This document shows, in pieces, positions 36,201 through 42,200 of a stretch of 64,000 nucleotides of DNA (the stretch's first letter is position 1; every line of letters starts with the position of its first letter). The stretch is taken from positions 1 through 64,000 of the forward strand of contig NIVC01003243.1 of the NCBI GenBank assembly GCA_002269645.1, written 5' to 3'. Both the position numbers and the translations under genes were made by a program. Under the pieces are notes generated by a model. That model made no database searches, was not told where the DNA came from, and saw only the letters and a list, made by a program, of their open reading frames with translations. The DNA comes from Macrostomum lignano (taxonomy: Eukaryota).

Positions 36201-39200
36201 TAGGGGCCAGGATAAAACACACAGTGACTTGACGTCAATCGTGCTAATTTTGTCAGGGCAACAAGGAGTACTATGAGCAGGAGATCATACTCAACTCAAA
36301 ACTGAAAACGATGGCCGTGAACCTCAGCCTCCTGTGGGGCGGGCACAACACCGTGAAAGCTCAGCTGAAGTACAGCTCAGACAGAGGTAAGCTGCCAACA
36401 ATATTATGTCCAAATAATAGGTATAGGAAAGGTCAACAAACGTTTAGTACCAAAGAGACTTCTTGGAAGGCGAAACCGGAAGGACACTAGCAAATTTTGC
36501 GCAAATCTTGCTGGAGTACGGTTTGCAAACGCAACAAGCAGGTGCTTTTGTTGGAGATACGAATTGTGTGGGAGATATGAAGTGTCGGAGATTATGAAGT
36601 GTGGGAGATATGAAGTGTCGGAGATACGAAGTGTCGGAGATATGAAGTGTTGGAGATTGAAGTGTCGGAGATATGAAGTGTGGGAGATATGAAGTGTTGG
36701 AGATACGAAGTGTCGGAGATATGAAGTGTTGGAGATTGAAGTGTCGGAGATATGAAGTGTCGGAGATATGAAGAGTCGGAGATATGAAGTGTCGGAGATA
36801 TGAAGTGTCGGAGATATGAAGTGTCGGAGATATGAAGAGTCGGAGATATGAAGTGTCGGAGATATGAAGTGTCGGAGATATGAAGTGTCGGAGATGTGAA
36901 GTGTTGGAGATTGAAGTGTCGGAGATGTGAAGTGTCGGAGATATGAAGTGTCGGAGATATGAAGTGTCGGAGATATGAAGTGTCGGAGATATGAAGTGTC
37001 GGAGCTATGAAGTGTCGGAGATATGAAGTGTCGGAGATATGAAGTGTCGGAGATATGAAGAGTCGGAGATATGAAGTGTCGGAGATATGAAGTTTCGGAG
37101 ATATGAAGTGTCGGAGATATGAAGTGTCGGAGATATGAAGAGTCGGAGATATGAAGTGTCGGAGATATGAAGTGTCGGAGATATGAAGTGTCGGAGATAT
37201 GAAGTGTCGGAGATATGAAGTGTCGGAGATATGAAGTGTCAGAGCTATGAAGTGTCGGAGATATGAAGTGTCGGAGATATGAAGTGTCGGAGATATGAAG
37301 TGTCGGAGATATGAAGAGTCGGAGATATGAAGTGTCGGAGATATGAAGTGTCGGAGATATGAAGTGTCGGAGATATAAAGTGTCAGAGCTATGAAGTGTC
37401 GGAGATATGAAGAGTCGGAGATATGAAGAGTCGGAGATATGAAGTGTCGGAGATATGAAGTGTCGGAGATATGAAGTGTCGGAGATATGAAGTGTCGGAG
37501 ATATGAAGAGTCGGAGATATGAAGTGTCGGAGATATGAAGTGTCGGAGATATGAAGTGTCGGAGATATGAAGTGTCGGAGATATGAAGTGTCGGAGATAT
37601 GAAGTGTCGGAGATATGAAGTGTCAGAGCTATGAAGTGTCGGAGATATGAAGTGTCGGAGATATGAAGTGTCGGAGATATGAAGTGTCGGAGATATGAAG
37701 AGTCGGAGATATGAAGTGTCGGAGATATGAAGTGTCGGAGATATGAAGTGTCGGAGATATAAAGTGTCAGAGCTATGAAGTGTCGGAGATATGAAGTGTC
37801 GGAGATATGAAGTGTCGGAGATATGAAGTGTCGGGGATATGAAGTGTCGGGGATATGAAGTGTCGGAGATATGAAGTGTCGGAGATATGAAGTGTCGGAG
37901 ATATGAAGAGTCGGAGATATGAAGTGTCGGAGATATGAAGTGTCGGAGATATGGAGTGTCAGAGATATGAAGTGTCGGAGATATGGAGTGTCGGAGATAT
38001 GAAGTGTCAGAGATATGAAGTGTCGGAGATATGAAGTGTCGGAGATACGTTATTTCGGAAGTGAGTGCTAAAAAACTGAAAAATGAAACCAACCTCCAGC
38101 AAAATTTACTTGATTTTCGAGTGCAATTAGCTCGTACTTCTGCTTCAGTTGGCCATCCAGTGATTTATCAATACGTACTCGGACCAATGATTATGCCACT
38201 AATTAAGCGACTAATTATACCCGAATCCACGCACAACCCGCATCGCAGAATACACCTCAGTAGGCGGCGACGAAGCCCTGCCATTGGACGAGGAGTTTCA
38301 AAATCACGTCCGGTGTTTTGTTAATTTGAATAATCGAAAACCGGAACTTCGTTATAAACTGGCCAGGCTGCTTGTGAGCGGCCTCAGGTAAGAATTTGAG
38401 TTTTGTGTGGTCATGGCTATGGCTATGGTTATGGTTATGGTTATGGCTATGGATATGGTTATGGTTATGGTTATGGATATGGTTATGGTTATGGTCATGG
38501 CTATGGCTATGGTTATGGTTATGGCTATGGATATGGTTATGGTTATGGTTATGGATATGGTTATGGCTATGGCTATGGCTATGGTTATGGTTATGGCTAT
38601 GGATATGGTTATGGTTATGGTTATGGATATGGTTATTGCTATGGCTATGGCTATGGTTATGGTTATGGCTATGGTTATGGCTATGGCTATGGATATGGTT
38701 ATGGCTATGGTTATGGCTATGGTTATGGATATGGTTATGGCTATGGCTATGGATATGGTTATGGCTATGGCTATGGTTATGGTTATGGCTATGGATATGG
38801 TTATGGTTATGGCTATGGTTATGGCTATGGTTATGGCTATGGTTGTGGTTATGGTTATGGTTATGCTTATGGATATGGTTATTATTATGGTTATAATTAT
38901 AATAATGGTTTTGGTTATGAATTTTTATGGTTAAAGTTATGGTTATCGTTCTGCTTGTGGTTAGGTCGTTACGGTTACAGCTATAATTATTATGGTTATG
39001 GTTACGGATCTTCATGAGTATGGTTATAACTCGCAGTTTATTTTTTGATAGATGAGTGTTTTTTGAGAATTTAATTTTTCCTTAATTTTGTCTATGGCAG
39101 AAACCGTTCCTAGAATAAACTTTTTTGTTGGAATCCAAGTTAAGATGTAAAGGATACAAATATCATAGGGAGTAGCTAGCTATTCTAGTAAAATCAGCGA

Positions 39201-42200
39201 AACAACTAAGGTAAAAATTCAATCAATGTCGGAGTACCTGGAGCAGCTGCAGCTAGATGAGGCTCGCGTCAATCACAAACTCTGCCGGGCGCTGCTGAAA
39301 CGTCGCAGCCGCAGCAAATCTCGATCGATCGATGATGACGACATCGCAGGCCAGCTGCTGTACCTGACACTGCTGATCACGGAGGCTGGCTACGATCTTG
39401 ACGGCATCGTAAAACCGCGCTGGTTCGGCCTGACTGTCAGCGTTGTCCTTCGGATGGCGGCCGTCGGGTTGTTGATTTTCTGCTCGATTCTCCTGGCAGC
39501 GCCGAGCGTTGTCAAGGGATTGCACTGATGCATTTAGGCAAACTTGCTTAATAATAAGAAAAAATGCTCTCTTCACTACTTCTCATCGAACATGAGTAAT
39601 ATAAACGAAATACTTGTAGTAAAACATTTGTTATTGATTAATTTTACTTTCTACTAAAAGATTAAATAATATTAACAACATTCAAACCAATGGGATTGGG
39701 GACCCATTTATGTAAGCGTTAATATTCGATATGTGAGCGTTGAAAAAAAGGTTAAGTTCAGATTGTATTGTGACCATTTTCCCTTTAAACAGATAAACTC
39801 ATTTTAACGTTAAATAAGATTCAAGAAAGGACACCAGAGAACCAAAAACAGATATGGTGCTAAAGCCCCTGGTGCTAAAGCTAACAGTGCTAAAGCCACT
39901 GGTGCTAAAGCCCCTGGTGCTAAAGCCACTGGTGCTAAAGCCACTGGTGCTAAAGCCACTGGTGCTAAAGCCCCTGGTGCTAAAGCCACTGGTGCTAAAG
40001 CCCCTGGTGCTAAAGCCACCGGTGCTAAAGCCACCGGTGCTAAAGCCACTGCTGCTAAAGCCACCGGTGCTAAAGCCAGCGGTGCTAAAGCCACTGGTGC
40101 TAAAGCCACCGGTGCTAAAGCCTCCGGTGCTAAAGCCACTGATGCTAAAGCCCCTGGTGCTAAAGCCACTGATGCTAAAGCCCTTGGTGCTAAAGCCCCT
40201 GGTGCTAAAGCCCCTGATGCTAAATCCCCTGGTGCTAAAGCCCCTGGTGCTAAAGCCACTGGTGCTAAAGCCCCTGGTGCTAAAGCCACTGGTGCTAAAG
40301 CCCCTGGTGCTAAAGCCACCGGTGCTAAAGCCACTGGTACTAAAGCCACCGGTGCTGGCGCCCCTCACATAAAGCTGATAAATAAACCAACCGCTGCGCC
40401 ACACCAGGATCACGTCGGTCTCGAGCTCTCAACACGTGTCCAAGCCCAGCAGTCAGGAGGCCAACAGCCGCCGGGATCAGGAGCGCCTGACCGTCCGGGT
40501 GCTGCAAATTCTGCGCGCTTTCATCCACAATGAAGAGAGAAAACTGCCCGACGAATGGGAAGTGCGAATGTCCGAGTTTCGGGTTAAGAGGTGAGTAGAG
40601 ATCGATTCTAATTCAATATTAGTGCACATAATACATGTAGAAGGGCCAGTGCTAAGGATATGGGAACAGGAGCTGCTTTTCCAAAGGAAACCACTCAATC
40701 ATATTAATTACCCCATTGGCAGAGGTCTAAAAACGATTGCGGACATCCAGTCCACTCTGAACTCGTTTGACTTGATGAAACACGCCTTGCCACATTTGGC
40801 CTCGTCTAACAGCCAGATTGCGAAAGAGGTTCTCTCACTGCTCGGCATTATGCTGTTCAATGCTAACGAGAAAGTTCAGGTATGAATGAGTAAAACGACC
40901 AATGTCTATTTCGTTCATGCGCCCACCTTACTCCGCTTTTACTCTGTCCCCTGACTGGCTCTTATCAATGCGTGCACCCACCTCACTCCGCTTTCACTCT
41001 GTCCCCTGACTGGCTCTTATCAATGCGTCCACCCACCTCACTCCGCTTTCACTCTGTCCCCTGACTGGCTCTTATCAATGCGTCCACCCACCTCACTCCG
41101 CTTTCACTCTGTCCCCTGACTGGCTCTTATCAATGCGTGCACCCACCTCACTCCGCTTTCACTCTGTCCCCTGACTGGCTCTTATCAATGCGTCCACCCA
41201 CCTCACTCCGCTTTCACTCTGTCCCCTGACTGGCTCTTATCAATGCGTCCACCCACCTCACTCCGCTTTCACTCTGTCCGCTGACTGGCTCTTATCAATG
41301 CGTGCACCCACCTCACTCCGCTTCCAAACTCCCCGACTGGCTCTTATCAGTGCGTGCAGCCGACACGTCCACAACAATTTTAACCCTTCAAAATTTATTT
41401 TTTCCAACCGCAGGAAAGCATGCTTAAATACTTCCTGCACACAAAAGAGGAAGTTTTCTTCTACGCCGTACGCAACCGAATGCAAATGTCAACGGCCAAC
41501 ATCAAAGAGAAGCGCCTGCTGATATCACAGCAGCGGGCCAGACTGCAGGACGCCAAGAGTCAAGCTGACAATTTGCGAACTACAATGACATTAGGAGTCA
41601 AGGCCCTTCAGGTGAAGTGTGGCTTCAAGATTTCCTGACCATAAACTTGAATTTAAAAACTTACACACCTTTGCATATCTATAGCTTTCTTTTCGTGCCA
41701 CACAAAAAATTGGCATTCCAGCAAATTCAGCAGTACCACGTTGAAATGAAAATCGAACAAGCCAACAACGATCTCACTGCAAGTAGAGTTTTGTTTTCTA
41801 TTTTTATTTCTTGCTAATTTCTAGCCTACTGAAAGTAGCAGAGTAAGATCGCAAAATAAAAGGTTTAATTATTTGTTGGCGCTAAAAAATCCTACAATAA
41901 CAATAACTCGATTTCAGGATGCATTGGTAAATTTAAGAAGTTTATTTTATAAACTATATTGTCGATTTTGTTCATAGATTTTTCCAATTAATTATCCGAT
42001 CGTGTCTTTCTTTTAACCAGTTCTATAAAACCTTAACTATTTCGAACTAACATTCATAAAAAGCATTCTTGGAGACGTAGCTATGTTGAGTTTCTGTCTA
42101 GCAGAACTATAATATATGGCTGTGATTTATTTAGATTTATGATTTATGAAAAAATTGTGTTTTCTTCTGCATAAGAGTAAAGTCAGTCAGTAGTCTCCTC

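What the first reader, a model, noticed from the sequence alone, without database searches (positions are those of the whole stretch)
39189..39528. Hidden coding-like ORF inside an ITPR intron: nested membrane protein or alternative terminal exon
Seen: a 100-codon GC-rich ORF on the same strand as the host, ending in a hydrophobic stretch (WFGLTVSVVLRMAAVGLLIFCSILLAA). The frame is open from 39169. Two AG sites (ttctag at 39187-88 and atcag at 39196-97) would both splice in frame to the phase-2 donor at 38387. Inference A: an alternative last exon making a truncated, tail-anchored receptor that keeps the ligand-binding half but has no pore, a possible IP3 sponge or dominant regulator. Inference B: an independent micro-protein. 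Inference C: a relic of a 7TM ion channel gene, since QLLYLTLLITEAGYDLDGIV loosely resembles the last helix region of gustatory-receptor-like/DUF3537 proteins.
Basis: partly seen in the sequence, partly recalled or inferred. Interest (0 to 1): 0.75.

Follow-up and report, generated by a model that had tools for sequence, protein, structure and literature searches.

The report
Orphan membrane-protein gene inside ITPR intron
The ORF is real and looks like a true coding sequence: a small gene with no known relatives, already listed in GenBank as a hypothetical protein, sitting inside an intron of the flatworm Macrostomum lignano IP3-receptor gene and predicted to encode a 100-residue tail-anchored membrane protein rather than an alternative end of the receptor.

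Summary
An ATG-to-TGA ORF of 100 codons lies at 39226-39528 (+). Its frame is open from 39169. It sits in a phase-2 intron (38388-40407) of an IP3-receptor gene.

The window is Macrostomum lignano contig NIVC01003243.1. GC content jumps from 0.30 to 0.58 exactly at the ATG and falls back exactly at the stop. GC3 (0.72) and codon usage match the ITPR exons. It is the only non-ITPR ORF of 80 or more codons in the window with an exon-level per-codon score.

The same protein is annotated in GenBank on three near-identical ITPR copies (100 aa twice; 120 aa 5'-partial, PAA58530.1). The partial model joins a 10-nt leader exon, about 1.6 kb upstream of the ITPR start codon, to an acceptor at 39175|39176. 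Spliced from the ITPR donor at 38387, that acceptor gives an immediate TAG. The only acceptor an annotation implies therefore makes no receptor-ORF fusion.

No homologue turned up in Pfam, PDB, a 5.8-billion-protein word search or an exhaustive HMMER search of 1.84 billion representatives. The peptide has two N-terminal helices, an RRSRSKSRS/DDDD stretch and one C-terminal transmembrane helix.

Best reading: an independent nested orphan gene for a tail-anchored protein. Inference B is supported. A is unsupported and C is refuted. Function is unknown and interest is modest.

The parts
38249..38387 (+). ITPR coding exon upstream of the host intron. It ends CTCAG|GTAAGA in phase 2. The 5' boundary is inferred from the cgcag acceptor.
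   Evidence: Read. Translation ...LARLLVSGL. Host identity.
38388..40407 (+). Host ITPR intron, about 2.0 kb, phase 2. The acceptor caccag|G is inferred from reading-frame continuity (AG+G = Arg, then ITSVSS...).
38408..38963 (.). 6-nt minisatellite (TGGTTA, 93 copies) filling the 5' part of the intron.
39174..39175 (+). Acceptor AG (gagtag|CTAGC) used by the annotated spliced model PAA58530.1 on the paralogous contig. The exon then starts at 39176. Joined to the ITPR donor it reads AG|C TAG, a stop.
   Evidence: P0002 was rebuilt as AGTTGTTTCC plus the sequence from the L003 position equivalent to 39176; this yields SCFPSYSSKISE....
39187..39197 (+). Both would be in frame with the ITPR donor. 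There is no evidence that either is used.
39176..39225 (+). AT-rich 5' leader of the nested transcript (GC 0.30, no ATG). It contains a donor-like AAG|GTAAAA at 39210|39211.
39226..39528 (+). Coding sequence of the 100-aa orphan protein (GC 0.58, GC3 0.72).
39421..39513 (+). Codons for residues 66-96 (WFGLTVSVVLRMAAVGLLIFCSILLAAPSVV), the single predicted C-terminal transmembrane helix. Only 4 residues follow it.
   Evidence: Kyte-Doolittle 19-residue means reach 2.5. AlphaFold helix at 68-91.
39598..39666 (+). Candidate poly(A) signals 70-135 nt after the stop: AATATA/TATAAA at 39598-39605 and ATTAAA at 39661-39666. Inferred only.
39855..40356 (.). 15-nt minisatellite (TGGTGCTAAAGCCAC, 33 copies) filling the 3' part of the intron.
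40408..40590 (+). Next ITPR coding exon (R)ITSVSS...LTVRVLQILRAFIHNEE...SEFRVK, with donor AG|GTGAGT.

Best explanation
The feature is a separate protein-coding gene nested, on the same strand, in a late intron of the Macrostomum lignano IP3-receptor gene.

Its single coding exon (CDS 39226-39528) encodes a 100-residue protein restricted to this lineage. The N-terminal region is cytosolic: an amphipathic helix at residues 3-29, a basic Ser/Arg stretch RRSRSKSRS followed by DDDD, and a second helix at 37-53. There is one C-terminal transmembrane helix (about 66-96) followed by only 4 residues. That is a tail-anchored topology, so insertion into the ER or another organelle membrane would be post-translational.

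Inferred expression route: the mRNA is made from the ITPR transcription unit. A short leader exon about 1.6 kb upstream of the ITPR start codon is spliced to the acceptor at 39175|39176, skipping the receptor's coding exons that lie between. This is seen in one annotated model on a paralogous contig. The transcript then ends at a poly(A) site inside the intron, and translation starts at the first ATG of the exon.

Shown: the ORF, its coding-type composition, its presence as an annotated gene on three copies, the splice structure of one model, the absence of homologues, and the topology prediction.

Inferred: use of the ITPR promoter, polyadenylation inside the intron, translation, membrane insertion, and any function.
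For: A sharp GC step sits at the ATG and at the stop, and GC3 and codon usage equal those of ITPR exons. It is the only non-ITPR ORF of at least 80 codons with an exon-level per-codon score in the window.

An identical protein is called as its own gene on NIVC01003243.1 and NIVC01000023.1. A 120-aa 5'-partial form (PAA58530.1, BOX15_Mlig012457g2) is called on NIVC01002364.1. That annotation derives from RNA-seq transcript assemblies filtered for coding transcripts (PMC5730564).

The partial model reconstructs exactly as a 10-nt exon with a GT donor plus the acceptor at 39176. The 11-mer AAGTTGTTTCC (the 10-nt exon plus the base before it) occurs only once in the 55.8-kb locus.

Locally, the exon shows 1 synonymous difference in 353 nt between paralogues. 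The unique flanks show 15 events in 538 nt (Fisher p=0.004).

The ORF has no copy elsewhere in the window, so it is not a repeat or a transposon.
Against: No homologue exists anywhere, so there is no evolutionary evidence that the protein is maintained.

The three copies are too similar for dN/dS: 0 non-synonymous and 1 synonymous change. In addition, 44% of unique intronic 303-nt windows also show 1 difference or fewer.

The ORF is exactly 100 aa. To my knowledge that is TransDecoder's default minimum, so its annotation only shows transcript coverage plus an ORF that just passes a length filter.

Same-strand intronic reads from ITPR pre-mRNA could seed such a transcript model. The models differ between copies (complete versus 5'-partial). 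No RNA-seq, SL-read, poly(A) or proteomic data could be inspected here. The AlphaFold model has low confidence (pLDDT 56).
Confidence: 0.6

Rival explanations
1. Transcribed but non-functional. The GC-rich ORF is an incidental or decaying coding-like segment, or the coding part of a terminal or 'poison' exon whose real effect is to truncate ITPR transcripts. It was annotated only because it reaches the 100-aa ORF threshold.
For: There are no homologues. The ORF is exactly 100 aa. About 8% of composition-matched shuffles stay open. Paralogue comparison has no power. With the acceptor at 39176, the ITPR frame stops at once, which is what a truncating exon would do.
Against: The codon-usage score is 6 SD above shuffles and sits at exon level. 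The GC boundaries coincide with the ATG and the stop to within one 30-nt window, which chance or a purely regulatory exon does not predict. The peptide has an organised helix / charged linker / TM layout.
Confidence: 0.25
2. Alternative last exon of ITPR. The donor at 38387 splices to 39189 or 39198, producing a receptor of roughly 1,800 or more residues that lacks RIH_assoc and the pore and ends in this tail anchor.
For: Both junctions are in frame. The ORF is on the same strand and inside the gene. Its frame is open 57 nt upstream of the ATG.
Against: The only acceptor implied by an annotated model is 39176, which gives TAG in the ITPR frame. No ITPR-ORF fusion protein was found among about 15 billion sequences: the cluster holds only the 100-aa and 120-aa forms. 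The in-frame leader 39189-39225 is 30% GC and UTR-like, and the coding composition starts at the ATG. A strong donor-like AAG|GTAAAA lies between these acceptors and the ATG.
Confidence: 0.07
3. Relic of another gene or of a mobile element (the reader's Inference C: a 7TM/GR-like/DUF3537 fragment, a transposon, or a retrocopy).
For: The ORF lies in a unique island between two minisatellites. A short A-run follows AATAATAAG after the stop.
Against: There is no Pfam hit to 7tm_7, DUF3537 or any transposon domain at E<=10. There is no parent or paralogue protein in the exhaustive search. There is no second copy in the window or in L003. It was found only inside the three ITPR copies.
Confidence: 0.05

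Closest known systems
Same-strand nested genes that share a 5' non-coding exon with their host, for example the cholinergic locus where VAChT lies in an intron of ChAT (own knowledge)
   Same: A small intronless coding unit sits in a host intron on the same strand. In the one spliced model it is reached by splicing from a leader exon upstream of the host's start codon, so two unrelated proteins come from one transcription unit.
   Different: Here the nested unit lies deep in the gene, after the second RIH domain, not in the first intron. That ITPR mRNA also uses the 10-nt leader is inferred, not shown. No functional link between the two products is known.
SL trans-splicing and polycistronic transcription units in M. 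lignano (PMC5730564, PMC8629364)
   Same: The organism routinely cuts several mRNAs out of one precursor. The annotation pipeline (TBONE) defines genes inside transcription units, and the locus tag of this gene carries a 'g2' suffix.
   Different: No SL-read evidence could be inspected. The candidate acceptors do not match the [T/C]TNCAG trans-splice motif well (gagtag, ttctag, aatcag). The arrangement is intronic nesting rather than a tandem operon.
Tail-anchored or type II ER regulators of Ca2+ handling: IRAG1/MRVI1 and IRAG2/Jaw1/LRMP, which bind IP3 receptors through a coiled coil (PMC8707672, PMC10298018, PMC9223716); also phospholamban, sarcolipin and sarcolamban for SERCA (own knowledge)
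   Same: Cytosolic helical N-terminus, a basic Ser-rich stretch that resembles kinase sites (RRSRS), and one C-terminal membrane helix. The gene sits inside an IP3-receptor gene.
   Different: There is no sequence similarity: no Pfam MRVI1 or phospholamban hit at E<=10. The protein is far smaller than the IRAGs and larger than the regulins. No interaction or localisation data exist. The resemblance is in topology only.
Pore-less IP3-binding fragments ('IP3 sponge' constructs; own knowledge)
   Different: No evidence that such an isoform is made here. The acceptor an annotated model implies gives a stop in the ITPR frame.

Membership tests
Tail-anchored membrane proteins (a topological class) | A single transmembrane segment within about 30-40 residues of the C-terminus, with a very short luminal tail | tested here: met
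   Hydropathy peak of 2.5 over residues 66-96 of 100, with 4 residues after it. AlphaFold helix at 68-91 (low confidence).
Tail-anchored membrane proteins (a topological class) | No N-terminal signal peptide or other TM segment | tested here: met
   The N-terminus MSEYLEQLQLDEARV is acidic and hydrophilic. The second most hydrophobic stretch (residues 40-62) reaches only about 1.2, below the usual 1.6 cut-off.
Tail-anchored membrane proteins (a topological class) | Post-translational insertion (GET/TRC40 or a related pathway) and actual membrane residence | not testable with these tools
   Needs expression and localisation experiments.
Alternative terminal exon of ITPR | A splice junction from an ITPR donor into the exon that keeps the receptor frame open into the ORF | tested here: not met
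   The acceptor implied by the annotated model (39176) gives AG|C TAG. The in-frame acceptors 39189 and 39198 are hypothetical. Junction reads could not be examined.
Alternative terminal exon of ITPR | Existence of a predicted or observed protein joining ITPR sequence to this peptide | tested here: not met
   Only the 100-aa and 120-aa stand-alone forms are in the collection.
7TM gustatory-receptor-like / DUF3537 | A profile match to the family | tested here: not met
   The Pfam scan at E<=10 returned only Pox_L5 at E=0.13, below its cut-off. HMMER over 1.84 billion representatives found no relative.
IRAG/MRVI1/LRMP family | A profile match to the Pfam MRVI1 domain | tested here: not met
   No hit at E<=10.
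Transposon- or repeat-derived ORF | Similarity to transposon proteins, or multiple dispersed copies | tested here: not met
   No transposon domain. No other copy in the window or L003. All three known copies sit at the same position in ITPR paralogues. The whole genome was not searchable.
Host gene: IP3 receptor (ITPR) | RIH, RIH_assoc and ion-transport domains in order on the same strand | tested here: met
   (window exons). (Ins145_P3_rec, MIR, RYDR_ITPR and RIH_assoc on the paralogous gene).

The most novel reading that the evidence does not exclude
The nested gene encodes a flatworm-specific tail-anchored ER micro-protein. It is co-transcribed with the IP3 receptor from the same transcription unit and binds or tunes that receptor, or ER Ca2+ handling more broadly, through its cytosolic helix and phosphorylatable RRSRSKSRS stretch. 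It would be a functional analogue of IRAG/Jaw1 or the regulins that arose independently. Host and regulator would then be coupled by alternative splicing.
Probability: 0.07. Interest if true: 0.7.

Novelty: new member of a known kind. Interest (0 to 1): 0.27.

Why it matters
If the protein is made, it adds an uncharacterised, lineage-restricted tail-anchored protein to a genetically tractable regeneration model. It would also be an example of two unrelated proteins produced from one transcription unit by splicing from a shared leader.

Its position inside the IP3-receptor gene makes a role in Ca2+ signalling an easy hypothesis to test, but nothing here shows such a link.

For genome scanning, it is a clean case where composition alone correctly flags a real annotated gene: a GC and codon-usage step exactly at the ATG and at the stop.

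Tried and rejected
- **Homology.** All searches were negative: Pfam at E<=10, the 5.8-billion-protein word-index search, exhaustive phmmer over 1.84 billion representatives and PDB sequences. The single HMMER hit, P0006, is a translated tandem repeat (SRWFLIISMVSYHLDGFLS x10) and was rejected as spurious.
- **Structure.** The single-sequence AlphaFold model has pLDDT 56 and pTM 0.26. That is too poor for a fold search, so none was run.
- **dN/dS between the three copies.** There is only one (synonymous) difference. Divergence is so patchy that 44% of intronic windows are equally conserved, so this was rejected as uninformative. Only the local flank comparison is suggestive.
- **Locus tag of the ITPR gene.** I tried to learn whether it shares the Mlig012457 prefix. 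Two searches with ITPR exons returned only 57-73% identical Logan fragments from other flatworms and never the M. lignano ITPR proteins.
- **Literature.** Searches for Mlig012457 in papers and supplements found nothing.
- **The 10-nt leader.** It is not the end of the M. lignano spliced leader CGGTCTCTTACTGCGAAGACTCAATTTATTGCATG. It is absent from the window, whose contig begins inside an ITPR intron repeat.
- **Rfam scan of 38000-41000.** Only sub-threshold hits in the minisatellites, none in the ORF.
- **The 2145-aa ITPR model on L002.** I briefly suspected it ended early. The coordinate was just the locus edge.
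Full report
**What is there**

The window matches Macrostomum lignano contig NIVC01003243.1 (assembly GCA_002269645.1) in the same coordinates: the exact-protein look-up places the ORF at record position 39226. The + strand carries an IP3-receptor gene. Pfam finds RIH at 30935-31447, RIH_assoc at 43513-43920 and Ion_trans at 52858-53421. 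On a paralogous contig the same ORF lies inside a called gene with Ins145_P3_rec, MIR, RYDR_ITPR and RIH_assoc.

The contig begins inside an ITPR intron. Positions 1-15073 are one 32-nt tandem array, and the gene's 5' end is missing.

The ITPR exon ...LARLLVSGL ends at 38387 (CTCAG|GTAAGA) with two bases of a codon. The next exon starts at 40408, after caccag. The intron 38388-40407 consists of three parts:
- a 6-nt minisatellite at 38408-38963;
- a unique island of about 830 nt;
- a 15-nt minisatellite at 39855-40356.

The ORF sits in the unique island. It runs from the ATG at 39226 to the TGA ending at 39528, 100 codons, with the frame open from 39169.

**Is it more than chance?**

An open frame of this length is not rare for sequence of this composition: 8% of shuffles stay open. 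The composition itself is the signal.
- GC is 0.30 in the 50 nt before the ATG, 0.58 in the ORF and 0.26 after the stop. The steps fall at the ATG and at the TGA.
- GC by codon position is 0.64/0.38/0.72, against 0.53/0.32/0.71 for 4.3 kb of ITPR exons.
- A codon model trained on those exons gives +30.6 bits. Shuffles give -57 +/- 14 and never exceed -15.7. The ORF frame scores highest of the six. Four frames are negative, and the minus-strand frame holding the 107-aa antisense ORF reaches only +4.6 bits.
- Among all 80 stop-to-stop ORFs of at least 80 codons in non-repeat sequence on both strands, it ranks 6th per codon, among ITPR exons. The one other high scorer outside my training set (41384-41635) is itself an ITPR exon.

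**Public annotation**

The identical 100-aa protein is a called gene on two contigs. A 120-aa 5'-partial version is PAA58530.1, 'hypothetical protein BOX15_Mlig012457g2', on a third. All three sit at the same place in near-identical ITPR copies, as expected in this largely duplicated genome (PMC5730564).

The GenBank annotation derives from RNA-seq transcript assemblies. Those were cut at trans-splice and poly(A) signals, screened with TransDecoder and filtered to coding transcripts. Some transcript evidence therefore underlies the gene. A caution: 100 aa is, to my knowledge, TransDecoder's default minimum.

**Splice structure of the partial model**

Its gene range spans 35.8 kb and starts 1.6 kb upstream of the ITPR ATG (L003 10001 versus 11630). 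The protein SCFPSYSSKISE... is reproduced exactly by joining AGTTGTTTCC (L003 10001-10010, followed by GT) to the sequence that starts at window 39176, after gagtag. The 11-mer AAGTTGTTTCC, the exon plus the base before it, occurs once in the 55.8-kb locus. It is not the end of the spliced leader.

The model therefore joins a short leader exon directly to the intronic exon, skipping the receptor's coding exons that lie between. The '120 aa partial' form arises only because no in-frame stop precedes the ATG in that short leader.

If the same acceptor is joined to the ITPR donor at 38387, the receptor frame reads AG|C TAG and stops. In the ORF frame, that ITPR exon contributes an in-frame TGA (read from the sequence). 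Such a transcript would therefore carry a 'complete' 100-aa ORF. That may explain the complete models on the other two contigs, but I could not see those models.

**The protein**

No relative was found by any of these searches:
- Pfam at E<=10;
- a word-index search of 5.8 billion proteins;
- exhaustive phmmer against 1.84 billion representatives, whose only other hit is a translated tandem repeat;
- PDB sequences.

There is no paralogous fragment elsewhere in the window. The single-sequence AlphaFold model is weak (pLDDT 56) but places helices at 3-29, 37-53 and 68-91. Hydropathy shows one strong transmembrane segment at about 66-96, followed by four residues. The N-terminus is acidic, so there is no signal peptide. 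Between the first two helices lies RRSRSKSRS followed by IDDDD. This is the layout of a tail-anchored protein.

**Conservation**

The paralogues give little. The most diverged copy differs by one synonymous change (GCG>GCA, Ala) and no replacement. Locally, the exon (1 difference in 353 nt) is better conserved than the unique flanks (15 events in 538 nt, p=0.004). However, 44% of unique intronic 303-nt windows across the gene show 1 difference or fewer, so I treat this as suggestive only. Genomic contigs from other flatworms are in the databases, with ITPR exons 57-73% identical. No counterpart of the ORF was detected.

**Interpretation**

Most likely (0.6) this is an independent nested gene for an orphan tail-anchored protein, expressed from the ITPR transcription unit and translated from its own ATG.

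The main rival (0.25) is a transcribed ORF without a functional product, possibly a truncating terminal exon.

- the acceptor an annotated model implies gives a stop in the ITPR frame;
- the in-frame leader has UTR-like composition;
- a donor-like AAG|GTAAAA lies at 39210|39211, between the proposed acceptors and the ATG;
- no fusion protein is on record.

The 7TM-relic idea has no support.

A role in Ca2+ signalling, by analogy with the IP3R-binding type II membrane proteins IRAG1 and IRAG2/Jaw1 (PMC8707672, PMC10298018, PMC9223716), is an attractive guess. It rests only on genomic location and topology.

**Verdict**

This is a real coding-like feature, already annotated as a hypothetical protein. 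It is an ordinary kind of object, an orphan nested gene, with an unusual address. Modest interest.

Noticed in passing
window 1-15073, and introns throughout 15000-54500: The window opens with a single 32-nt tandem array of 474 copies. Nearly every ITPR intron holds its own minisatellite (periods 4-55 nt), many with strong strand skew. 48% of the window is TRF-masked. These arrays create many long spurious ORFs in several frames.
   Followed up: partly
window 61815-63980 (-): A 721-codon ATG ORF on the opposite strand downstream of ITPR. It has no Pfam hit and a positive codon-usage score (+49.6 bits over the 727-codon open frame 61818-63998). It is probably another lineage-restricted single-exon gene.
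   Followed up: partly
window 39210|39211: A strong donor-like motif, AAG|GTAAAA, lies between the candidate acceptors (39176, 39189, 39198) and the ATG at 39226. If used, it would define a 14-35 nt micro-exon and exclude the ORF. No evidence either way.
   Followed up: no
L003 10001-10010 (NIVC01002364.1), about 1.6 kb upstream of the ITPR ATG at L003 11630: A 10-nt annotated first exon, AGTTGTTTCC, preceded by aaaag-a and followed by GT. It may be the trans-splice acceptor or leader exon of the ITPR transcription unit. With the SL's terminal ATG it would form a 5-codon upstream ORF (MKLFP*) that ends just inside the nested exon.
   Followed up: partly
window 41384-41635 (+): An open frame with an exon-level codon score (...FFYAVRNRMQMSTANIKEKRLLISQQRARLQD...). 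It looks like a further ITPR exon in the poorly conserved linker region.
   Followed up: no
L004 (Logan SRR33002330 contig) and proteins P0003, P0007, P0008: Short genomic contigs from other, unidentified flatworm-like organisms carry ITPR exons 57-73% identical to M. lignano. They show that relatives exist in the sequence collections, though not at the nested ORF.
   Followed up: no
window versus L003, whole gene: Divergence between ITPR paralogues is very patchy: 0 differences over several kb in some introns and 3-6% in others. Exon third positions differ at only 0.16%. This suggests gene conversion or very recent duplication with local hypervariability near repeats.
   Followed up: partly
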